A DNA stretch of 64,000 nucleotides from IMGVR_UViG_3300028864_000016:124001-188000, one strand, 5' to 3'; counted from the stretch's first letter, positions 5,942-23,060 are shown. Numbers and translations: made by a program. The notes: generated by a model not told the origin, from the sequence alone.

Positions 5942-7456
5942 TTATATGACATTTTTTAAATTTTCATTATGCAATCCTTTTAATTTATTTGCTATATCAT
6001 ATTTTATATATTCTTCTGGGGTTAAGTATTCTATGTATTTGAAATGATGTCCTTTATGATAATTTCTTTCTTCTCGACAAACTCTAGATATTCCCCCATT
6101 ATTCATTATCACTCCAAAATCTTTTAAGCTTTTATTTGCACATTCAGTAGCAGATATGTATACTTGTTTTGTTTCCAAACAAATTACAGCTTTTGAATTG
6201 ATTAATTTATTGATTTCTGTAGCTTTTTTATATTTGTTAATATTAGCTTTTTCAGAGTCATAATTACACCAATTAAGCCTGTTACCCATTTTTAAGTATT
6301 TTTGTGCAGTAGAACCACTAATATTCATAGTTTTTCCTAAATCTGTAGCGAATTCAAAATTATATGTATTCCATATGTCGCAAGCTTCTTTAACTCTGTT
6401 AGAACAAGCAAATTCGTGGCATTTTAACCAATCAATAGCATTTAAATTTATTTGACTAGCTAAATTACTTTTTAATATATTATTTTTTATCCAATCTAAA
6501 TTACTTAATCTACAGTCTATAATAATATAGTTTTCTTCCTTGATATCATTTTGCAAAGCTAATTCTTTCTTAAATCTATCATTTTCTTGTTCATCTTCTA
6601 ACGTTCTACCGTTTTTCATTGTATAAAAAGATTTTTCATAATGTTGCTCTCCATTTGCTTCTATGATATATTTCTCATTATTATATTTAAAATAAAAATC
6701 ATATCTTTTAGAGTTTGACCATTTTGCCTTATATTCTGGTTTAAAAGTAAGATTTAATTGTTGCAATAAACTAAAAATAAATTTATTTGGATATGATAAT
6801 CCATCATTGCAACACCCTAATTTTTTACTATAAAAATGGTCTATTTTTCTTAATTTTTCACATCCACAATATATACATTTAAATAATATTTTTGAATGTG
6901 ACTGTGATTTGTATTTATATGCGTCTTCTTTATTAGACAACCATTGAATCATCCAAGGATCTGTTGTTGCAATATCATTTATACCTTTCATTATTGCACT
7001 ATGACCAAAACAGACAGCACAATTTTGTCCAGCTTTAAAATTACTTTCAAGCCTAATGCCAATATAGCCACATATAGGACATTTATATTCATAGGCTCTT
7101 ACATTTGTACCATTGCTAAGTTTTTGTCTTGTACACTTTATAATTTTAACTCCATTAACAGTCTCATTTAGCTTATAAAAATATTCATTAGTTCTTAATT
7201 TTAAAATATGAGAAAGTCCACATTTCTGAAAATCACCAGTTCTTATGAAATATTTTTCATCATTATAATATAGTTCTAATTGTTGTTTTTTAGAATTATA
7301 ATCAAATATAGTTATATATCCCTCTATATCATCATAAATGAATTTAACTTTATACCCTTTAGAATTCTTCCAATCTGTTACTTGCTTTTTTGAATTTGCT
7401 CCAATTCCTTGTTTGCATGGCAATTCTTCTAAAAATACTTTCCTAATAGTTATCAC
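5942..7456 (-). CDS. Free-standing homing-type endonuclease: zinc ribbons, PD-(D/E)xK/Vsr-like nuclease, NUMOD1-like C-terminus
   Basis: CPICG/CAVC/CIYCG zinc ribbons; RYDFY..IEANGEQHY..DRFKK nuclease; VICLETKQVYISATEC..ISRVCR tail. Confidence 0.7.
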   Translation of the reverse strand: MITIRKVFLEELPCKQGIGANSKKQVTDWKNSKGYKVKFIYDDIEGYITIFDYNSKKQQLELYYNDEKYFIRTGDFQKCGLSHILKLRTNEYFYKLNETVNGVKIIKCTRQKLSNGTNVRAYEYKCPICGYIGIRLESNFKAGQNCAVCFGHSAIMKGINDIATTDPWMIQWLSNKEDAYKYKSQSHSKILFKCIYCGCEKLRKIDHFYSKKLGCCNDGLSYPNKFIFSLLQQLNLTFKPEYKAKWSNSKRYDFYFKYNNEKYIIEANGEQHYEKSFYTMKNGRTLEDEQENDRFKKELALQNDIKEENYIIIDCRLSNLDWIKNNILKSNLASQINLNAIDWLKCHEFACSNRVKEACDIWNTYNFEFATDLGKTMNISGSTAQKYLKMGNRLNWCNYDSEKANINKYKKATEINKLINSKAVICLETKQVYISATECANKSLKDFGVIMNNGGISRVCREERNYHKGHHFKYIEYLTPEEYIKYDIANKLKGLHNENLKNVI

Positions 7457-8051
7457 TCCTTTTGATTAATAATTTTCCAACAACCTTTCTAACACCTAAT
7501 TTATTTATACGTTTTTCATATTGATAATCTGTCTCATAACTTAATCTTTGAATAAATACATCTACTTTTATGTTTCCATTTGATAATGTTTTTATATAAT
7601 TTGGATTTCCTCTGTCTGTTGCAATATATTCTATCCCGTTAATAATTAATTTGCTTCCAAATGGGATATCTTTTGGAACAGCAACCTGTCCTTCTTTTAC
7701 AGGTATTCCACTAGCAGTAATAAACTTATTGTTTCCACACTCATTATAAGTTGCTCCATAATAAGATATTATAAAAGTTTTCTCTTCCCATTCAGGTTCA
7801 TTTTTCTGTTGTTCTTTTAGTAATATTTTAGCTTTTTCATCTTTCTTTTTACCAAGTTCAATTCTATCTTTTTCAAATTGTTCTTGAATCGGATTAATTC
7901 CTAATCCAAATCTATCTTTATGTACCATTATATCTACATTAGCTTCTTCTTTAATATTATTCGCTAATGGTGTCATAGTGGCTGTTGGTATCGTAAATAG
8001 TAAACTACTTGATAATAATACCATAGACAGACACATTGTCCTATTTCGCAT
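7443..8051 (-). CDS. Secreted 3D-domain cell-wall protein (Sps/YorM-like putative lytic transglycosylase)
   Basis: N-terminal signal-like segment; TASG, VAVPKDIPFGS, ATDRG, VDVF. Confidence 0.85.
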   Translation of the reverse strand: MRNRTMCLSMVLLSSSLLFTIPTATMTPLANNIKEEANVDIMVHKDRFGLGINPIQEQFEKDRIELGKKKDEKAKILLKEQQKNEPEWEEKTFIISYYGATYNECGNNKFITASGIPVKEGQVAVPKDIPFGSKLIINGIEYIATDRGNPNYIKTLSNGNIKVDVFIQRLSYETDYQYEKRINKLGVRKVVGKLLIKRSDNY

Positions 8052-8086
8052 CTAATCAACTCACTTTCTCTTCTATATATGTTTTT

Positions 8087-8983
8087 TTATATACTCATTA
8101 ATTCTGTAAATTCTATAACTTTTCCAGTTTCATTTGCTATTTCAACTATATTGGTAGCAAGTTCTTGAACTGCTGAATTTGTTTGTTCCATGCATGCACT
8201 CATTGAAACACATCCATCATTTATACCTTCTATACGAGATATTCTAAGTACATTGCTTTCTTTTAATTTTTTACTATTTTCTTTCCCCGTTTCAGTTTTT
8301 TCAAGAATAACGTTAGCCATAACTTGTAATTCTTTTATAATTTGACTTATCATTATACTAGAATCTTTAGTTTCTTGTGCGAGTTTTTTAACTTCATTTG
8401 CAACAACTCCAAATCCTTTACCTGCTTCACCTGCTCTTGCAGATTCAATATTGGCATTTAATGATAATAAATTGGTTTGATTAGCTATGTCTTTAATCAC
8501 ATCTGTTATTTTATCAATGTCTTTCATTTTAACATGTAATTCATTTGCATTATTATTGATATCAGCTATAGCATCGTGAAATATTGCCATAACTCCACTA
8601 TTGTCTTTAGCACTTTCATAAGCAAGATTAACTTCTGAAGAAATATTAACTATATTCGCTGTTACTTCTTCTACCGTTGCACTTATTTCCTCCACTGAAC
8701 CTGCTTGACCTGTTATATTATTACTAATTATAGACATCTCTTTTAATAATTTTTCATTTGATTCGGATGTTGACTTCTTATATTCTTCGAATGTTTTATC
8801 TTTTTCAATTAATGTTATATGTAGTTCTTCATTTTGTAATTCCAGTTCTTTGATTTTACTATCTTTCTTTAATTCAAGTTCTTCTAGTTTATCATTCGTT
8901 TCCTTTTCTAAAGTTATTCTTAGTTCATTTAACCCTTTTTCATTTTTAAATAATTTTTTCATCATATTAATACACTCCCTCAT
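8087..8983 (-). CDS. Cytoplasmic methyl-accepting chemotaxis protein (signalling domain only)
   Basis: [37 protein letters not shown] hairpin tip; EEISATVEE and EQTNSAVQE methylation-like helices; no TM segment. Confidence 0.93.
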
Positions 8984-9100
8984 TAATTTATTACTTGTTG
9001 GCTTTCAATACTTTGTCAACGCTAAATTGTCAGGAACTTGTATTATGTTTAGTTTTATGTCATTAATACTTTTATCACCTCTGTTTATATTAATTTATTA

Positions 9101-9460
9101 TTAATCTTTTATATACCCACAATCACAACCATATTTATATACAGTTTCATATACTTCTCTACCTTGCATTTCTCCTCTTGGCTCGTCCCGCTTATCAATT
9201 ACAATTAATTCATCTCCACATTTGGGACATCTACTTAACTTTTCTGCAAATTCTTCTATTTCTCTTGTTAGTTCAACTATAAATTTTTTGGGATTATTAT
9301 TAACATCGTCTATTAATTCTTTTATCATCTGAATTGTTTCTCCTACTTCATAACAATCTCTATTTATTATTTGTATTAATTCATATTTATCCATAATATC
9401 CACTCCCACTCCTCTCTTATTCATCTTTAATTTCGATTTCTTTATTTCTATCAAACACAT
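9101..9460 (-). CDS. Hypothetical protein with zinc ribbon
   Basis: CPKCG and CDCG. Confidence 0.6.
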   Translation of the reverse strand: MCLIEIKKSKLKMNKRGVGVDIMDKYELIQIINRDCYEVGETIQMIKELIDDVNNNPKKFIVELTREIEEFAEKLSRCPKCGDELIVIDKRDEPRGEMQGREVYETVYKYGCDCGYIKD

Positions 9461-9662
9461 AGTGAGTATGTTCGTTTATTGTTATTTTACTTTGAAAATA
9501 AAATTTATTATTACAATTACCATTCATACATCTAGCTACAAACTCAGTATATTTAGTTCCATCTATTTCTACTAATTTATAATCATCTGTTAATTGATAT
9601 TTAGATTCTTTACATTCAGGGCAATATAATCTATTGTCCTTCAAAATTGCTTTTAATATCAT
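9417..9662 (-). CDS. Small zinc-ribbon hypothetical protein
   Basis: CPEC and CMNGNC. Confidence 0.55.
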   Translation of the reverse strand: MILKAILKDNRLYCPECKESKYQLTDDYKLVEIDGTKYTEFVARCMNGNCNNKFYFQSKITINEHTHYVFDRNKEIEIKDE

Positions 9663-9677
9663 CTTAATCCGCTTCCT

Positions 9678-10004
9678 TTATTCATATTCTTTATATGTAT
9701 TAATAAATAAGGTATTTAAATTATGTATTTCATCTTCATCTATAGATATATTATTATTTATATATCCTAATTTGTTTTTGTCTATTACTTGATAAACTAT
9801 AATACTATTATTATTCACAGCGGTTTCATCATATACTTCATCTGAAATAATAGATTTAAATATTAATTTGTTATTTTGTTTTTCTAATACGCAATATCTT
9901 AATTTACTAGAATTAGTTCCTTTTTCTAATATACAATAGATACTATCTTTTGAAGCGGTTATTTCTTGGATACTCATCTGCTTTCCATGATATATCACAT
10001 GCAT
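9678..10004 (-). CDS. Hypothetical protein
   Basis: 108-aa ORF overlapping the sigma-factor stop. Confidence 0.6.
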   Translation of the reverse strand: MHVIYHGKQMSIQEITASKDSIYCILEKGTNSSKLRYCVLEKQNNKLIFKSIISDEVYDETAVNNNSIIVYQVIDKNKLGYINNNISIDEDEIHNLNTLFINTYKEYE

Positions 10005-10594
10005 AATGATACCTCATCTTTTAGTTCTATTTGTAACTTCTTTTTAATTTGTTTTATTCTATAGCGAATGCATTCTCTAGTTTTATCATACATCCTTCCT
10101 ATTTCAGCGTAATTTAATCCTTTCATAAAGTGTAAATTAATCATATCTTGTTCTTGACTAGAAAAAGTTTTTAACACTTCTGATATTTTTTGATTAGTAA
10201 TATTTAATAATGCAGATTCTTCACAATTACAATTATCATCTTTAATTGTTTCAATCATTTGTAAGTCATCAGATTCATCAACTATACTATATATACTGCA
10301 AGTTTCAATATCTCCACCACGTTTTTGTCGTTTATCTCTTTTATATGTATCAAATATAATGTCTTTAATTACTTTTTTCGCATAAGGTACGAATGACATA
10401 TTCTGTGAAATGTCGTAATAATTATAAGCTTTAATTAACCCAATATATGCTATTTGAATCAAATCATCTTTTTCATAATGTGAACACCATTTAATTACAT
10501 CTTTTGTATGTGTCATTTTATCAAATTCTTTTACTACTTCATCTAATGTCATTTCTTTATTTATACCGTTTTTACATCTTATTAATTTTTTCAT
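9995..10594 (-). CDS. Sigma-70 family sigma factor (sporulation/SigH-like, regions 2 and 4)
   Basis: DDLIQIAYIGLIKAYNYYD..SFVPYA region 2; LNYAEIGRMYDKTRECIRYR region 4 HTH. Confidence 0.9.
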   Translation of the reverse strand: MKKLIRCKNGINKEMTLDEVVKEFDKMTHTKDVIKWCSHYEKDDLIQIAYIGLIKAYNYYDISQNMSFVPYAKKVIKDIIFDTYKRDKRQKRGGDIETCSIYSIVDESDDLQMIETIKDDNCNCEESALLNITNQKISEVLKTFSSQEQDMINLHFMKGLNYAEIGRMYDKTRECIRYRIKQIKKKLQIELKDEVSLCM

Positions 10595-10632
10595 TATTTA
10601 CTCTCCTTTTTTTATTTTAATTTGTTAATGTA

Positions 10633-10661
10633 ATAGTACTATATAATGGATATGTTGTCAA
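10633..10661 (-). promoter_or_regulatory. Sigma-A type promoter for the sigma-MCP-3D operon
   Basis: TTGACA-17nt-TACTAT, flanked on both sides by the repeated AYAAATTAA box. Confidence 0.85.
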
Positions 10662-10683
10662 TGTTTATTTATATTAATTTATT

Positions 10684-10950
10684 TTATTCTTCGTTATAAT
10701 CATATCTAACTTTATCAATTTCATAAACATCTTTATATTCAAATCTATATAAGTTATCATTCTGTATTAATTCTTCAAAATCAATAATTTCAATTCCATC
10801 TTGGTCAACTTTTTCTTTTAAAATCTCAAGAATTACATCTTCTAATAACTCTTTGTCCTCAATAATGCCTTCTTTAATTGTTATAATTGTATCTCCATTT
10901 AATTGAATATCTCCAATCCAGTATATAAACCTTACTATGTAATCAATCAT
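10684..10950 (-). CDS. Acidic hypothetical protein
   Basis: 88-aa ORF. Confidence 0.55.
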   Translation of the reverse strand: MIDYIVRFIYWIGDIQLNGDTIITIKEGIIEDKELLEDVILEILKEKVDQDGIEIIDFEELIQNDNLYRFEYKDVYEIDKVRYDYNEE

Positions 10951-11144
10951 TATTTATCATCTCCTTCTTTTGAATTACTTTTTATGTTTTCATAAATTGA
11001 TATACTTAAGAATAAAGCAACTATACTATCTATTCCGTTTGGATTTGCATTTCCATATGAGATCAACTCTGCAAATTGCCAACATATTGCTATTATCACA
11101 TATAAAAATATAAGACTTATTAAATAATCTAATCTTTTCCTCAT
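10950..11144 (-). CDS. Small two-TM membrane protein
   Basis: Two hydrophobic helices. Confidence 0.55.
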   Translation of the reverse strand: MRKRLDYLISLIFLYVIIAICWQFAELISYGNANPNGIDSIVALFLSISIYENIKSNSKEGDDK

Positions 11145-11243
11145 TATTATCTCTCCTTATATCTATTAATTTATTAAAACCTTATAAAATTTCTCCTTTA
11201 TTTAGATTTTGGATAATTTAAATTCATTTCACATTCAACTCCC

Positions 11244-11837
11244 TTATTTTAAATCTATATTTACATCTTTTATAATACTGTCTTTTGGTATATGGAATAT
11301 ATAATCTGTTTCTTTATCATTAATTTCACCCATAGAACCTTTAAATAAAAATTTGCCTATATTATTTAATTCGTAAGTATTTTTTTCGTGAGTAACTTCC
11401 ATTATGTTTTGATTATCTTCATAAAATCCTATGTGGTTCATATTCATATCTTTGGATTGAATTCTTATAATATTATTACCATCTTTATAAGCATATCTAA
11501 TGTTATATGTATCAGATTTTTCACTATTTACACTACCAAAGAATAAAAAGTAATTTCCATTAAGTTGTTCCTTTAATCCAGTATAATCATTCAAAGCTAC
11601 TAATTCAGTTTTAGTTGTATAGGTTTCTTTGGTTGAATAGTTGCAAACAATATATGTTACAATACATAATATTAAAGATATTACAAACAATCCTACTGCC
11701 ATCATTATAATGGTAATTATTGTTTCAGCTACATCGTTTATTTCTAAAAGGCTTCTTAAAGTCTTATTAAATATTAAAAGTAATCCTATTAATATTCCAA
11801 TTCCAATTGCTATAGTCCAAAAGTTATTTATTATCAT
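11244..11837 (-). CDS. Membrane protein, two N-terminal TM helices plus soluble domain
   Basis: Hydrophobic residues 5-65; GNYFLFFGSV motif. Confidence 0.7.
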   Translation of the reverse strand: MIINNFWTIAIGIGILIGLLLIFNKTLRSLLEINDVAETIITIIMMAVGLFVISLILCIVTYIVCNYSTKETYTTKTELVALNDYTGLKEQLNGNYFLFFGSVNSEKSDTYNIRYAYKDGNNIIRIQSKDMNMNHIGFYEDNQNIMEVTHEKNTYELNNIGKFLFKGSMGEINDKETDYIFHIPKDSIIKDVNIDLK

Positions 11838-19736: not shown

Positions 19737-22700
19737 TTAAAGTTCATCTAATACTTCCTCCATGTTTGGTATAACCGAATAATTAGTTATATGCCACTCG
19801 ATTTTATTTTCATCAACTTCAAATAATGGTTTTACATTACCCTTTTTATCAGTCTTTTCTCCAACTTTTTTCCACCCAAACTTCTTTTCCATAGAATGAA
19901 TATAAATTACATCATTAACATTTAATTCACCATCATTATTCCACAACTTCTTATTAATTTTACATTTACATGTAGCCCCATTATTTAAGCAGTATGTATT
20001 TACTATAGGAGTATATTTAGTATTAATATCTGTAATTAAAGCATATCTTTTTTCGATTTTTCCATTTTTATAATCTATATAACCTAAGATTTCATTTTGA
20101 AAAGCAAGTTTTTCTTTAAAACTGATATCTGTATTAGGTATATTGACTACTTGATCTACTAATAACTTATAAGTATCCACTTCTTTAAATACTTTCTCCG
20201 TTTCTTTATTTGCATACTTTCTAATTAAATTTATATTTTCATCGCTTAATTTGCTTTTACTAAACTGTTTTTTACTATATAACTTATTATATAAATTAAC
20301 TATAGTTAATAACTTTTGTGATTTGCCAAAACAATCAAAATAATCTAATTTAATAAGTATTTCTAATTGACGTGAGTTACAAGATGTATTTTCTTTAATA
20401 TCTAATAATAAATCTAAAAAACTATTATATTTATTATTTTGAGATAATTCATATACTTCATCTGCCACCTTATTATTAAGATTTTTAATTGAGCCTACTC
20501 CTTTATATATACTATTTGTTTCCTTTGACATAAAATAACTAGCTTTTGCATAACCAAACTTAGGTGATGATATACTTATTCCCTTACTATTAGCATATTT
20601 AATTATACTAATAGTCTTCTCTTCTTTATCTTTGTTAATATTTAATGCTGTAGTTATAAATTCTAATGGATGATAATATCTTAGGTATCCAGCGATATAT
20701 CCAATATATGTATATGGTACAGCATGATTTTCACTAAAAAGATAATCCGATGCATCAGTTATTACCTGTATAAAGCTTACAATTAATTTCTTAGATTCTT
20801 CTTCATCTACATTATATTTTTCTTTCATAGTTTTAACGAAACCACTTGTAATTTTAGGAATAAACTTTTCTGTACCTGTTTTTTTTGCAAATCCACGCCT
20901 TACAATATCAGCCTCACCCATTGTATACCCACAAAATTCATGTAAGAAATTCATAATTTGCTCCTGATAAACCAAGTACCCCATTGTTGGGGCTAGAAAT
21001 TTGTTCAATGCTTCATGTCCATTATCTCTAAATTCACCATTAGATAATGCATTACGATAACTTGCACCAGCTGGTCTAATAGCACCATTTCCCATTGAAA
21101 CTAAATCCACATATCTAAAATTTGGATTAACTTGTTTAATTTTATTTAATGTTTTTTCACTTAATAGTGTTTTTATAAAAGCACCTGCACTATCTGATTC
21201 CCATTGAAATATCAAAGTATTATCTTTAGCCATTGATTGCCACACATCTTCTTCATCTGGTGTGTTTTCAGGAGTTAATCTTTCTATATTAGATAATTCG
21301 CAAGTTTCATTTATTATTTGAACATTATCTAACCCTAATAAATCTAACTTAACAAAATTTTGTGTATCTATTGATTTCATGCTTATCATTGATACAGGAT
21401 GTGAACAAGTTGATATACTACATAATCCCATAGAACTATCTAAAGGTATAGGGCTACAAATTTGCCCACATGGGTGTGTTCCTATAGAAACTATAGTTCC
21501 ATTGATTATATCAACATATTCAAACACTATTGGATATTCTTTTCTCATTTTAATTTCATCAGTTTCTATATTTTCACATATATAATTTGAAATTTTTAAA
21601 TAATCGTCCATGTACTCATGAACTTTTTTACTAGTACTATCTGTTAAAGTTCCATAACCTTCTACATCAATATCCATTTCTTTTTTTAATTCTTTAGGTA
21701 AATCTTTTTTATATAAAGCTCTACATACATCTCTAATACTACCCTTTAGAGCAACTGTGTTAAATGTTATTATATCAGCACAATATAAATCTTCTTTGCT
21801 ATATATATAATTTTTAACTAATTCTCTATGGTTTGGAGACCAGTCAGTATCAATATCTGCTAAACTTACTCTTTCAGTATTCATAAATCTTTCAAAATTC
21901 ATTTTATGTTTAATCGAATCTATTTCTGTTATCCCAATTAGATAAGCTATTTCACTTCCAGAACACGAACCTCTTGAATATCCAGCGAAAATGTTATTAC
22001 TCCTAGCCCATGTTTTAATATTTTCATCTAATAGCAAAAAGTCTACTGCTCCATTATGTATGTATGTTTCTAATTCATGTTCTATTCTTGGAATATATTC
22101 TGTTTTGTAGTTAGATAATTTATTTACTCCCTTTTCAACTATTCCCTCATTGATTTTTTGTTTTAATACATCTAAAGAATTATCATATAATTTAGGATAC
22201 TTGTATGACTTATCAACTTTAAATTCTTTAACTCTATCATACAATCTATTAGTATTTTCTAAGGCTTCATAAATTTCTTCTTCTGATAATATATTTTGCT
22301 TTTTGAATAATTCAACCAATTCATTGTATGATTTTAATGTTAAATCCCAACCATCTTCATTATCAAAAAAAATACCTTTTGATTTTTGTAATATTTCTCT
22401 ACCTTTTGCGTGTTTGTCATTTAATGCATGAGTATCAGTAGCTACAAGTAATGGAATATTATATTTTTTATGTAATTCACAAAGATATTTATTATAAGAA
22501 ATTTGGTCTTTTACTAAGTGGTGCTGAATCTCTAAATAACATCTGTTTGAGTTGTCAATTAAAAATTCAATAAATTTATCTTTTAATTCATCATTTCCTT
22601 TGCTTAATATTCCACCCAAACATGCTGTACTAATTAATATTTTACTACTTGTACTTATTAACTCTTCAAAGGTTATTCTTGGAGTATAATAAAAATGTCC

Positions 22701-23060
22701 ATCTTCTCTATTAAAAGCTTTTGAAACTAAGCTATTTAATTCTTCAAATGATTCATAATCAGTAGCATATAAACAAACATGATAATTATCTCTTATTTTT
22801 TCATCTAGAGATTCTGTAACATATGTTTCTATAGAATGAACATATTTAAAACCATTATCTTCACATTCACATTTCTTTTTATACCATTCAAACGTTGAAC
22901 CATGTTCTGTAAAACAAATTCCTTGTATTCCTAATGATTTATCACTTTTAATTTGTTTTATGTAATCTGAATATTTTGTTACTGAATCTATGTTTGTTAC
23001 ACCATTACTATACATTGTGTGACAGTGTGTTAATGTATATGTATTACTCATTTTATTCAC
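19737..23060 (-). CDS. dnaE: DNA polymerase III alpha subunit (C family, PHP domain)
   Basis: THCHTMYS PHP, FTEHG, RGSCSGS, LADIDTDW, GTHPCG, KLDLLGL, YLVYQEQ, FSENHA. Confidence 0.97.
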   Translation of the reverse strand: MNKMSNTYTLTHCHTMYSNGVTNIDSVTKYSDYIKQIKSDKSLGIQGICFTEHGSTFEWYKKKCECEDNGFKYVHSIETYVTESLDEKIRDNYHVCLYATDYESFEELNSLVSKAFNREDGHFYYTPRITFEELISTSSKILISTACLGGILSKGNDELKDKFIEFLIDNSNRCYLEIQHHLVKDQISYNKYLCELHKKYNIPLLVATDTHALNDKHAKGREILQKSKGIFFDNEDGWDLTLKSYNELVELFKKQNILSEEEIYEALENTNRLYDRVKEFKVDKSYKYPKLYDNSLDVLKQKINEGIVEKGVNKLSNYKTEYIPRIEHELETYIHNGAVDFLLLDENIKTWARSNNIFAGYSRGSCSGSEIAYLIGITEIDSIKHKMNFERFMNTERVSLADIDTDWSPNHRELVKNYIYSKEDLYCADIITFNTVALKGSIRDVCRALYKKDLPKELKKEMDIDVEGYGTLTDSTSKKVHEYMDDYLKISNYICENIETDEIKMRKEYPIVFEYVDIINGTIVSIGTHPCGQICSPIPLDSSMGLCSISTCSHPVSMISMKSIDTQNFVKLDLLGLDNVQIINETCELSNIERLTPENTPDEEDVWQSMAKDNTLIFQWESDSAGAFIKTLLSEKTLNKIKQVNPNFRYVDLVSMGNGAIRPAGASYRNALSNGEFRDNGHEALNKFLAPTMGYLVYQEQIMNFLHEFCGYTMGEADIVRRGFAKKTGTEKFIPKITSGFVKTMKEKYNVDEEESKKLIVSFIQVITDASDYLFSENHAVPYTYIGYIAGYLRYYHPLEFITTALNINKDKEEKTISIIKYANSKGISISSPKFGYAKASYFMSKETNSIYKGVGSIKNLNNKVADEVYELSQNNKYNSFLDLLLDIKENTSCNSRQLEILIKLDYFDCFGKSQKLLTIVNLYNKLYSKKQFSKSKLSDENINLIRKYANKETEKVFKEVDTYKLLVDQVVNIPNTDISFKEKLAFQNEILGYIDYKNGKIEKRYALITDINTKYTPIVNTYCLNNGATCKCKINKKLWNNDGELNVNDVIYIHSMEKKFGWKKVGEKTDKKGNVKPLFEVDENKIEWHITNYSVIPNMEEVLDEL

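What the first reader, a model, noticed from the sequence alone, without database searches (positions are those of the whole stretch)
8087..8983. Sensor-less cytoplasmic chemoreceptor encoded by a phage
Seen: near-canonical MCP hairpin tip and methylation-like helices, preceded only by ~80 aa of charged coiled coil, with no TM, HAMP or ligand-binding domain. No other che genes are recognisable in the window. It sits in phage context with a phage-like RBS and repeat box. Known: the tip binds CheA and CheW. Inference: it could enter host arrays and bias swimming, titrate CheA/CheW/CheR, or modulate another chemosensory pathway in infected or lysogenic cells.
Basis: partly seen in the sequence, partly recalled or inferred. 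Interest (0 to 1): 0.8.

Follow-up and report, generated by a model that had tools for sequence, protein, structure and literature searches.

The report
Phage-borne minimal soluble chemoreceptor family
A large phage from peat, probably infecting Clostridium-like bacteria, carries a stripped-down copy of the bacterial "steering" receptor that has been kept intact across a whole group of related phages, which suggests these viruses tamper with how their host swims, though no experiment has tested this.

Summary
Window 8087-8965 (minus strand; the true start is probably 18 nt inside the 8983 ORF) encodes a 292-aa protein. It consists only of an MCP signalling hairpin plus about 67 aa of charged N-terminal helix. 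It has no TM segment, HAMP or ligand-binding domain.

The window lies in a 218-kb tailed-phage genome (IMG/VR, peat) related to Clostridium phage c-st and Clostridioides phage pCD1602_4. The genome has no CheW, CheR, CheD, response-regulator or flagellin gene.

The gene is not a recent host capture:
- It belongs to a tight clade of about 46 protein clusters, 287-295 aa, 42-100% identical and almost free of indels.
- The clade occurs on at least 17 viral contigs of up to 229-283 kb.
- Local gene order is conserved, dN/dS is about 0.2-0.3, and base composition matches the phage.
- No member was seen in 390 Clostridiaceae genomes or in NCBI/UniRef-sourced proteins.

Conservation is highest at three places: the CheA/CheW-binding tip, paired methylation-consensus sites, and an unexpected 11-aa N-terminal motif. 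A conserved upstream DNA element is unique in the genome.

Most likely the protein plugs into host CheA/CheW arrays and resets swimming. Binding, expression and phenotype are all untested. I rate it a new variant of a known kind, with moderate to high interest.

The parts
8087..8965 (-). CDS of the 292-aa soluble chemoreceptor. The maximal ORF extends to 8983, but the likely start is the ATG at 8965.
   Evidence: ORF; Pfam MCPsignal E 1.3e-30; homologues begin at MMKKLFKN; AF2 hairpin.
8975..8981 (-). Shine-Dalgarno GAGGGAG, 8 nt upstream of the ATG at 8965.
   Evidence: Read directly from the sequence. AGGAGTGT is conserved at this position in relatives.
8996..9034 (-). Gene-specific conserved upstream element: yyGACAATTTAGnGTTGACA followed by AAGCCAAC. 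It is a candidate promoter or operator.
   Evidence: Conserved in WIN, L003, L008, L011 and L020, and partly in L004 (A2). It is unique in the 218-kb genome at up to 3 mismatches. The sigma-70 consensus scan does not call it.
8933..8965 (-). Residues 1-11: conserved N-terminal motif (M)[10 protein letters not shown].
   Evidence: Mean column entropy is 0.77 bits against 0.86 for the tip. F6, N8 and K10 are nearly invariant. AF2 confidence is low for residues 1-7.
8765..8932 (-). Residues 12-67: variable, E/K-rich helical extension with no partner arm in the hairpin.
   Evidence: Entropy 1.88 bits and a weak heptad signal; helix in the AF2 model; no Pfam domain.
8654..8713 (-). Residues 85-104: N-arm methylation helix ([16 protein letters not shown]). 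E92, E93 and E100 are invariant.
   Evidence: The consensus motif sits at -88 and -81 from the tip in nearly all 46 family members. The spacing equals Tsr E304/Q311 under the gapless alignment (plus the author's recall of Tsr site numbering).
8324..8530 (-). Residues 146-214: signalling tip (the CheA/CheW interaction region), with hairpin-turn Glu180.
   Evidence: Run of invariant columns Q163-A189; entropy 0.86 bits; alignment to TM1143 and Tsr tips.
8141..8200 (-). Residues 256-275: C-arm methylation-like sites ([14 protein letters not shown]), directly opposite the N-arm sites.
   Evidence: Motif at +80 and/or +87 in many members. The positions mirror -81/-88.
7443..8051 (-). Conserved downstream neighbour ('c4', 202 aa): signal peptide, helix, then a beta-barrel domain that is weakly 3D/DPBB-like.
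   Evidence: Follows the MCP gene in 8 of 11 loci compared. Pfam 3D at E 0.0098 in one homologue only. AF2 pLDDT above 90 for residues 120-200. Best Foldseek hit is a diffocin baseplate protein at E 4.7e-4, with expansin-like Phl p 1 third.
9101..9662 (-). Two small Cys-rich (zinc-ribbon-like) genes, 'c5' at 9101-9460 and 'c8' at 9417-9662, conserved just upstream of the MCP gene.
   Evidence: Clusters c5 and c8 recur upstream of the MCP gene in most related loci. No Pfam family was found. An exact RNA-library contig covers 9493-9634.

Best explanation
Shown:
- The gene encodes a bona fide methyl-accepting chemotaxis protein reduced to its cytoplasmic signalling hairpin, with about 16 heptads per paired arm in the same register as 36H-type receptors.
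- An unpaired, charged N-terminal helix of about 67 aa precedes the hairpin and is capped by a conserved 11-aa motif.
- The protein belongs to a family found only on viral or phage-like contigs. These are large tailed phages related to Clostridium phage c-st and Clostridioides phage pCD1602_4.
- The family has been kept intact under purifying selection.

Inferred mechanism:
- The protein is made in the host cytoplasm and dimerises into a four-helix bundle.
- Its near-canonical tip, which resembles the Firmicutes/Thermotoga type, binds the host's CheW and CheA. It either inserts into the membrane arrays or nucleates cytoplasmic arrays.
- The conserved Glu/Gln pairs keep it a substrate of the host's CheR/CheB/CheD adaptation enzymes.
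- With no ligand-binding domain, it feeds a ligand-independent signal into the array. This shifts CheA activity and swimming bias, or blunts chemotaxis, in infected or lysogenic cells.
- The conserved N-terminal motif on its helical spacer is the most likely site of any input or docking partner.

The benefit to the phage is not determined. Candidates are dispersal of infected or lysogenic cells, holding them in favourable zones, or changing flagellar rotation.
For: Identity: Pfam MCPsignal; PDB sequence hits to TM1143, Tsr, Aer and Tm14; AF2 hairpin with structural matches to Tsr and Tm14 and to the B. subtilis YfmS-CheW model.

Soluble and minimal: no TM segment and no other domain.

Phage origin: IMG/VR record with tail, neck and replication genes. 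The nearest cultured relatives are c-st, pCD1602_4 and Bacillus and Enterocloster phages.

Maintained function:
- About 46 protein clusters of 287-295 aa, 42-100% identical, essentially without indels.
- One clade with 100/99 support on a long stem.
- At least 17 IMG/VR contigs, with every gene not cut by a contig end intact.
- Conserved neighbours.
- dN/dS of 0.19-0.31 where dS is below 1.
- GC 0.279 and GC3 0.137, inside the phage's own distribution.
- A gene-specific upstream element conserved between phages.

Not found in cells: no member among 390 Clostridiaceae genomes. The best hit in 185,579 species genomes is 36% identical and partial. Family members come only from metagenome sources. 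Only 17 representatives at E <= 1e-30 exist among 1.84 billion.

Where selection acts: entropy is lowest at the tip, the methylation helix and the N-terminal motif. Methylation consensus sites are conserved at -88/-81 and +80/+87, facing each other across the hairpin.

Dependence on the host pathway: the own genome has no CheW, CheR, response regulator or CheD, and five related phage genomes have no CheW, including one rated 100% complete and one with terminal repeats.

Prior knowledge (not tested here): soluble cytoplasmic fragments of E. coli Tsr lock or jam CheA output when expressed in vivo.
Against: - There is no evidence of expression. In four metatranscriptome runs, only short mismatched tip fragments matched the MCP gene, although adjacent genes had exact contigs.
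- The host is not identified, so the match between the receptor's tip or length class and the host's Che system cannot be checked.
- The formal heptad class is unassigned. The C-arm is about 2 heptads shorter than a full 36H bundle.
- No binding, localisation or motility data exist.
- MCP divergence does not track other genes: G004 has a 95% identical DNA polymerase but a 58% identical MCP. The genomes are therefore mosaic and the gene's history is not simply vertical.
Absence from cells is therefore not proven.
Confidence: 0.55

Rival explanations
1. It is a true sensor rather than a constitutive plug. The conserved N-terminal motif and helix, or the bundle itself, detects an intracellular cue such as a phage protein, a metabolite, pH or redox state. 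Infected or lysogenic cells would then perform a phage-programmed taxis through the host pathway.
For: The N-terminal 11 residues are as conserved as the tip, while the spacer behind them is free to vary. Methylation sites are conserved, which matters mainly if adaptation to a changing signal is needed. The 428-aa variants nested in the same clade carry an extra C-terminal domain of about 140 aa that could be an input module. Known soluble receptors can sense through non-canonical regions: McpB senses ethanol through its cytoplasmic signalling domain (PMC7542364).
Against: No recognisable sensor fold is present. Residues 1-7 are low-confidence in the AF2 model. No partner has been identified. 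The conserved neighbours are small zinc-ribbon-like proteins and a secreted protein with no known link to chemotaxis.
Confidence: 0.2
2. It is a pure sink. It forms cytoplasmic complexes that sequester CheA/CheW (and CheR/CheD) away from membrane arrays. This abolishes chemotaxis or locks flagellar rotation, for example to block superinfection by flagellum-dependent phages or to save energy.
For: The tip is conserved, and a soluble protein with no membrane anchor can form separate arrays (cytoplasmic arrays are described in the reference cited in PMC7184735). No other che genes are present. The related large Bacillus and Clostridium phages infect flagellated hosts.
Against: A sink needs only the tip, yet the methylation helices and the N-terminal motif are also strongly conserved, and length is held to within a few residues. 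There is no evidence that these phages or their competitors use flagella as receptors.
Confidence: 0.15
3. It acts outside motility. The MCP scaffold may feed a Che-like pathway that controls another output (biofilm, development, second messengers), or it may serve the phage in a role unrelated to CheA/CheW.
For: Many bacteria have chemosensory pathways with non-motility outputs (PMC7184735 and PMC11253619). The host is unknown. The gene sits in a replication and nucleotide-metabolism module rather than with obvious host-interaction genes.
Against: The tip closely resembles that of flagellar-type receptors of Thermotoga and Firmicutes. The methylation-site geometry is canonical.
Confidence: 0.07
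4. It is a passenger or an artefact: a recently captured host gene fragment, a decaying remnant, or a host contig mis-binned as viral.
For: MCP genes are very abundant in Clostridium genomes (84 matches in one genome), so capture is easy. Many IMG/VR MCP hits at 30-43% identity are probably host genes at prophage edges.
Against: The gene is embedded in a contiguous 218-kb phage genome with structural and replication genes on both sides. The same gene is found in at least 17 viral contigs and 19 peat DNA runs. It is intact in all of them. dN/dS is well below 1, composition is phage-like, the clade is monophyletic on a long stem, and no cellular member was found.
Confidence: 0.03

Closest known systems
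Soluble, sensor-less chemoreceptors of bacteria: T. maritima Tm14 (PDB 3G67/3G6B) and B. subtilis YfmS (286 aa)
   Same: Both are cytoplasmic MCPs made essentially of the signalling hairpin alone, of similar size. The AF2 model superposes on Tm14 (TMt 0.85, rmsd 2.7 A) and hits the YfmS-CheW integrative model 9A72. YfmS is described as a soluble chemoreceptor of B. subtilis (PMC7542364).
   Different: This one is encoded by a phage lineage rather than a cell, and forms a separate clade. Its N-arm is about 67 aa longer than its C-arm and ends in a conserved LFKNEKGL motif. Sequence identity to Tm14 is only about 22% in the structural alignment.
E. coli Tsr/Aer cytoplasmic domain (36H class)
   Same: The alignment is gapless: query 80-268 to Tsr 291-479, and query 69-210 to Aer 298-439. 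The tip Glu and two N-arm methylation positions fall at the same distances from the tip. The structural match to 3ZX6 has TMq 0.72.
   Different: There is no TM segment, HAMP or periplasmic domain. The C-arm stops about 14 residues short of the Tsr bundle. There is no C-terminal pentapeptide (0 Trp). Tip residues are closer to the Thermotoga/Firmicutes type (EIRKLAE in the family consensus).
T. maritima TM1143 (PDB 2CH7, 44H class)
   Same: It is the best sequence hit among solved structures (E 7e-19), with about 68% identity over the 44-residue tip.
   Different: The alignment needs several insertions in TM1143 (249 against 225 residues), so the length class differs.
Full-length chemoreceptors carried by cultured jumbo phages, e.g. 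Vibrio phage vB_VmeM-Yong XC31 (dCache_1-HAMP-MCPsignal, 610 aa, annotated 'hypothetical protein'), and PHROG phrog_8572
   Same: These are phage-encoded MCP signalling domains. They show that phages carrying MCP genes are not unique to this lineage.
   Different: Those keep sensor, TM and HAMP modules and look like ordinary host-type receptors. The present family is stripped to the hairpin, has a fixed length and forms its own clade on viral contigs. No functional study of any of them was found in the library searched.
Engineered soluble cytoplasmic fragments of Tsr/Tar (own knowledge: Ames and Parkinson, 1990s)
   Same: They are sensor-less signalling hairpins expressed in the cytoplasm that activate or jam CheA and disrupt chemotaxis. 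This is the behaviour predicted here.
   Different: Those are laboratory constructs. This is a natural, selected gene. The comparison rests on recall and was not tested here.

Membership tests
Methyl-accepting chemotaxis protein (Pfam PF00015 MCPsignal) | Signalling-domain profile match above the curated threshold | tested here: met
   107 bits against a cut-off of 34.6, E 1.3e-30.
Methyl-accepting chemotaxis protein (Pfam PF00015 MCPsignal) | Conserved hairpin-tip sequence (the CheA/CheW interaction region) | tested here: met
   Invariant run Q163-A189 in the family. About 68% identity to TM1143 over 44 tip residues.
Methyl-accepting chemotaxis protein (Pfam PF00015 MCPsignal) | Long antiparallel coiled-coil hairpin fold | tested here: met
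   AF2 pLDDT 90.5. Foldseek hits to 3ZX6, 1QU7, 3G67 and 2CH7. This is a predicted monomer only; the dimer was not modelled.
Methyl-accepting chemotaxis protein (Pfam PF00015 MCPsignal) | Methylation-site consensus on both arms | tested here: met
   Motif at -88/-81 in nearly all members and at +80/+87 in many. E92, E93 and E100 are invariant.
Methyl-accepting chemotaxis protein (Pfam PF00015 MCPsignal) | Actual methylation by CheR, binding of CheA/CheW, and control of kinase activity | not testable with these tools
   Needs biochemistry and genetics in the unknown host or a surrogate.
Cytoplasmic (class IV) chemoreceptor without a sensor domain | No transmembrane segment | tested here: met
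   Maximum 19-residue hydropathy 1.29. The whole protein is predicted helical and charged.
Cytoplasmic (class IV) chemoreceptor without a sensor domain | No recognisable input domain (PAS, globin, Cache, HAMP and so on) | tested here: met
   Only MCPsignal is found in Pfam at E <= 0.1. Caveat: the conserved 11-aa N-terminal motif has unknown function.
36H heptad class (Alexander and Zhulin scheme) | No indels relative to 36H references through the signalling and methylation subdomains | tested here: met
   Equal-length alignments to Tsr (189/189 residues) and Aer (142/142). The alignment is 14 residues longer for 40H-type PcaY and 24 longer for TM1143.
36H heptad class (Alexander and Zhulin scheme) | 18 heptads in each arm | tested here: not met
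   The C-arm is 112 residues after the tip Glu180, which is 16 heptads. The N-arm is 179 residues. The paired bundle is therefore about 32 heptads. The class-specific HMMs (MiST) are not available here, so 34H cannot be excluded.
Phage auxiliary ('moron'-type) gene maintained by selection | Present in several related phage genomes, intact, under purifying selection, with phage-like composition | tested here: met
Phage auxiliary ('moron'-type) gene maintained by selection | Expressed during infection or lysogeny | tested here: inconclusive
   RNA-library contigs cover neighbouring genes exactly but do not cover the MCP gene. Contigs drop low-coverage sequence, and DNA carry-over is possible.

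The most novel reading that the evidence does not exclude
A lineage of large Clostridia-type phages (c-st-like phages and phage-plasmids) has evolved its own minimal chemoreceptor. It carries a new N-terminal docking or input motif and a dedicated regulatory element. The phages use it to take over the host's navigation system, so that infected or lysogenic cells swim where it suits the virus. That would be viral manipulation of bacterial behaviour through the chemotaxis array itself.
Probability: 0.35. Interest if true: 0.85.

Novelty: new variant of a known kind. Interest (0 to 1): 0.62.

Why it matters
Phages are known to reprogram host metabolism. Direct control of host behaviour through the chemotaxis array has not been demonstrated in the literature I could search, where phage MCP genes appear only as passing annotations.

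This family is a compact and experimentally tractable candidate:
- It is a single 292-aa soluble protein with clear predicted partners (CheA, CheW, CheR/CheB/CheD).
- It has natural variants spanning 42-100% identity.
- It has an unexplained conserved N-terminal motif.

If it alters swimming, it would show how a virus steers or immobilises its host in structured habitats such as peat. It would also provide a natural minimal receptor for studying array assembly and cytoplasmic arrays in Firmicutes.

Tried and rejected
1. 'Repeat box'. I searched for the upstream motif and for local repeats and found no repeated box. The only local repeat that touches the gene start (8924-8965 against 10556-10597, 74%) is AT-rich similarity between the 5' ends of two genes.
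2. Sigma-70 promoters and terminators. Promoter-like sites are no more frequent than in shuffles (38 against 32 +/- 6). No terminators were called, so the operon structure is unresolved.
3. Riboswitch or RNA element upstream. Rfam at E <= 1 gave nothing in 7300-11300.
4. A sigma-D-type promoter reading of AAAGCCAAC. I considered this by eye. It matches only about 5 of 8 positions of the -10 consensus as I recall it, with variable spacing, so I do not claim it.
5. Expression from public metatranscriptomes. No listed RNA run holds the gene. The result is inconclusive.
6. Host identification. Megablast of a related 229-kb element against plasmids and phages gave only nrdD and HNH fragments. The host is inferred only from protein similarity to Clostridium, Clostridioides and Bacillus phages.
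7. Co-divergence of the MCP with neighbours c4, NrdD and gyrase. There was no correlation, but the comparison is confounded by paralogues and split genes. The DNA polymerase comparison shows mosaicism.
8. Identity of neighbour c4. Pfam and Foldseek give only weak 3D/DPBB-like signals.
9. Formal heptad-class assignment. This is not possible without the class HMMs. I could only infer the register from equal-length alignments.

Full report
**What is there.** Window 8087-8983 (minus strand) is an open reading frame of 298 codons. Homologues begin at MMKKLFKN, and a GAGGGAG ribosome-binding site lies 8 nt before the ATG at 8965. The real product is therefore most likely 292 aa, 8087-8965. Pfam finds one domain, MCPsignal (E 1.3e-30, 107 bits, cut-off 34.6), and nothing else at E <= 0.1. 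PHROGs places it in phrog_8572, a phage family of unknown function whose 533-position profile it matches only over its C-terminal part. The protein has no hydrophobic segment (maximum 19-residue hydropathy 1.29), no proline and no tryptophan.

**Predicted structure.** AlphaFold2, run with a 35-sequence family alignment, gives a single long helical hairpin at mean pLDDT 90.5. The model superposes on three references:
- the Tsr cytoplasmic domain (3ZX6, TMq 0.72, rmsd 2.3 A);
- the soluble T. maritima receptor Tm14 (TMt 0.85);
- an integrative model of B. subtilis YfmS with CheW.

**Anatomy.**
- The hairpin turn is at Glu180 (ARAGE180AGKGF).
- The C-arm has 112 residues (16 heptads) and the N-arm has 179. 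Residues of about 68-292 can therefore form the antiparallel bundle, and residues 1-67 have no partner arm.
- Sequence alignments to Tsr (query 80-268 to Tsr 291-479) and to Aer (69-210 to 298-439) are of equal length. Those to PcaY and TM1143 are 14 and 24 residues longer.
- The register is thus that of 36H-type receptors, but the paired bundle is shorter. Formal class assignment needs HMMs that I do not have.
- Some MCPs of a Clostridium genome align over 195-198 residues with no net indel (C47:47028-47612 and C38:84406-84999). Receptors of this register therefore exist in Clostridium.
- The methylation consensus [ASTG]2-x2-[EQ]2-x2-[ASTG]2 occurs at -88 and -81 from the tip in nearly all family members, and at +80 and/or +87 in many. 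The sites face each other across the hairpin.
- E92, E93 and E100 are invariant.

**Context.**
- The window is bases 124001-188000 of a 218,173-bp IMG/VR virus record, rated 88% complete by CheckV. It has 25.8% G+C.
- Inside the window, the neighbours are NrdD, an HNH endonuclease, a sigma factor, DNA polymerase III alpha, RecJ, DnaB and a methyltransferase.
- Elsewhere the genome has tape-measure, tail, neck and Hoc-like proteins and two tyrosine recombinases.
- By protein similarity, the nearest cultured relatives are Clostridioides phage pCD1602_4 (DNA polymerase 55% identical), Clostridium phage c-st (a YonO-like RNA polymerase 50% identical), and large Bacillus, Enterocloster and Thomasclavelia phages. 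A Clostridia-type host is therefore likely, but this is inferred.
- The sequence is present in 19 peat metagenome runs.
- The genome has no CheW, CheR, response regulator, CheD or flagellin.
- Five related phage genomes also lack CheW, including one rated 100% complete and one with terminal repeats.

**Relatives.**
- A search of 5.8 billion protein clusters returns a sharply bounded family. P0001-P0046 are 287-295 aa apart from three shorter, apparently truncated entries, 42-100% identical and cover the full length, on contigs of up to 283 kb. After these, E-values jump from 1e-41 to 1e-29 and then 1e-20.
- All family members come from metagenome sources. None comes from NCBI or UniRef.
- An exhaustive HMMER pass over 1.84 billion representatives finds 220,703 MCPs, but only 17 at E <= 1e-30.
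- IMG/VR holds at least 17 viral contigs with full-length members. The gene is intact on every one where the contig end does not cut it.
- 390 Clostridiaceae genomes have no hit at E <= 1e-28, with only six candidates scored per genome.
- In a maximum-likelihood tree with the nearest cellular MCPs, the family forms one clade with 100/99 support on a long stem.
- That clade includes two 428-aa variants with an extra C-terminal domain. These lie on a phage-like contig full of small unidirectional ORFs.

**Selection and integration.**
- Pairwise dN/dS is 0.19-0.31 for pairs with dS below 1.
- The gene's GC (0.279) and GC3 (0.137) lie within the phage's own gene distribution of 0.258 +/- 0.025 and 0.155 +/- 0.032.
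- Local gene order is conserved in 8 of 11 loci compared: small zinc-ribbon-like genes, then the MCP, then a roughly 190-aa secreted protein, then NrdD/NrdG, often with gyrase upstream.
- The genomes are mosaic. One relative has a 95% identical DNA polymerase but only a 58% identical MCP, and two others lack that polymerase type altogether.
- Column entropy is lowest at the tip (0.86 bits), the N-arm methylation helix (1.08) and, unexpectedly, the first 11 residues (0.77). The helix between residues 12 and 67 varies freely (1.88) and shows only a weak heptad pattern.

**Regulation.**
- Upstream of the gene lies the element yyGACAATTTAGnGTTGACA followed by AAGCCAAC. It is conserved in five to six phages whose MCPs are only 43-72% identical.
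- It occurs nowhere else in the 218-kb genome. It is therefore a gene-specific element, not a repeated box.
- A consensus sigma-70 scan does not single it out, and Rfam finds no RNA family there.
- Four metatranscriptome runs were laid on 6000-11000. One holds exact contigs for 9493-9634, 9676-9826 and 10609-11000. On the MCP gene it holds only short mismatched tip fragments from other organisms. Expression of this gene is therefore not shown.

**Interpretation.**
- The identity claim is well supported: a phage-maintained, soluble chemoreceptor without a sensor domain.
- The mechanism is inferred from what the conserved parts are known to do. The tip binds CheW and CheA, and the Glu/Gln pairs are substrates of CheR/CheB/CheD.
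- A phage with no other che gene can only act through the host's pathway.
- From my own recall, soluble Tsr fragments lock or jam CheA when expressed in E. coli.
- I therefore favour a ligand-independent plug into host arrays that resets swimming bias.
- The conserved methylation sites argue that the protein takes part in adaptation rather than merely soaking up partners.
- The conserved N-terminal motif on a variable spacer suggests a docking or input site. This keeps open the more interesting rival that the protein is a real sensor of an intracellular cue.

**Comparison with what is known.**
- Sensor-less soluble MCPs exist in bacteria: Tm14, and YfmS, which PMC7542364 describes as a soluble chemoreceptor.
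- Cultured jumbo phages carry full-length MCPs that are annotated as hypothetical. One example is Vibrio phage vB_VmeM-Yong XC31, with a dCache_1-HAMP-MCPsignal architecture.
- A recent preprint lists an MCP, CheR and CheY in Nitrosospira phages (10.64898/2026.05.02.722434).
- A comparative review of 224 jumbo phages does not mention chemotaxis at all (PMC7824862).
- I found no functional study of a phage chemoreceptor.
- The protein kind is therefore known. What is new is a clade seen only in phage contexts, with a minimal architecture, fixed length, its own N-terminal motif and its own upstream element.

**Verdict.** I rate it a new variant of a known kind, with interest 0.62.

Noticed in passing
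window 8996-9034 (minus strand): The upstream element GACAATTTAGnGTTGACA...AAGCCAAC is conserved across phages with 43-72% identical MCPs but is unique in this genome. It is a candidate dedicated promoter or operator. The spacing between its two parts varies from 6 to 12 nt.
   Followed up: partly
window 7443-8051 (minus strand): A conserved downstream partner gene encodes a secreted 202-aa protein with a well-predicted C-terminal beta-barrel. Signals for a 3D/DPBB (cell-wall lytic) domain are weak: the best structural hit is a diffocin baseplate protein at E 4.7e-4. Between phages it is less conserved than the MCP (31-63% against 43-82%).
   Followed up: partly
P0047 and P0144; locus L170 8001-9287: Variants of 423-428 aa, nested in the same clade, carry an extra C-terminal domain of about 140 aa with no Pfam match. 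It is a possible output or input module fused to the C-arm. Their contig is phage-like and full of small ORFs.
   Followed up: partly
window 5942-7456 (minus strand); also L002 11669-12487 and L004 9450-9947: HNH, LAGLIDADG and NUMOD4 homing-endonuclease genes are scattered through this module. In relatives they split the NrdD and ribonucleotide-reductase genes, which suggests active intron or intein traffic in the region.
   Followed up: no
window 19737-23060 compared with G004:C1:104123-107437: A related phage with only a 58% identical MCP has a 95% identical DNA polymerase III alpha that contains one in-frame TAA. This shows strong mosaicism, and possibly a broken, recoded or intron-containing polymerase gene in that relative.
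   Followed up: no
window 9493-9634, 9676-9826, 10609-10796 and 10868-11000: Contigs with zero mismatches from a wetland metatranscriptome run (X20) cover the small genes upstream of the MCP and the region upstream of the sigma-factor gene. The phage, or its RNA, is therefore present in that RNA library.
   Followed up: partly
G000:C1:37266-40046 (locus L165 7266-10046), outside the window: A 926-aa protein is 50% identical to a Clostridium phage c-st protein and is related to proteins annotated as RNA polymerase in Enterocloster and Psychrobacillus phages and to SPbeta-type proteins. It is probably a YonO-like single-subunit RNA polymerase.
   Followed up: no
window 9995-10594 (minus strand): A phage-encoded sigma-70-family factor (regions 2 and 4, ECF-like) lies four genes upstream of the MCP on the same strand. 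It could direct transcription of this block.
   Followed up: no
loci L176 (MK308674.1) and L177 (MW495066.1): Vibrio phage vB_VmeM-Yong XC31 encodes a complete dCache_1-HAMP-MCPsignal receptor annotated only as 'hypothetical protein'. The record named Microcystis phage MaAM05 encodes a protoglobin-MCP next to thiL and ispD, which looks more like bacterial sequence.
   Followed up: partly
P0133, P0139, P0160, P0172, P0179, P0206 and P0234; loci L171-L173: Further AT-rich, sensor-less MCPs of 273-304 aa, 33-41% identical to this one, carry the same double EE methylation motif. They sit on short contigs among small ORFs without Pfam hits. The minimal-receptor architecture may be wider than the clade studied here.
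   Followed up: partly
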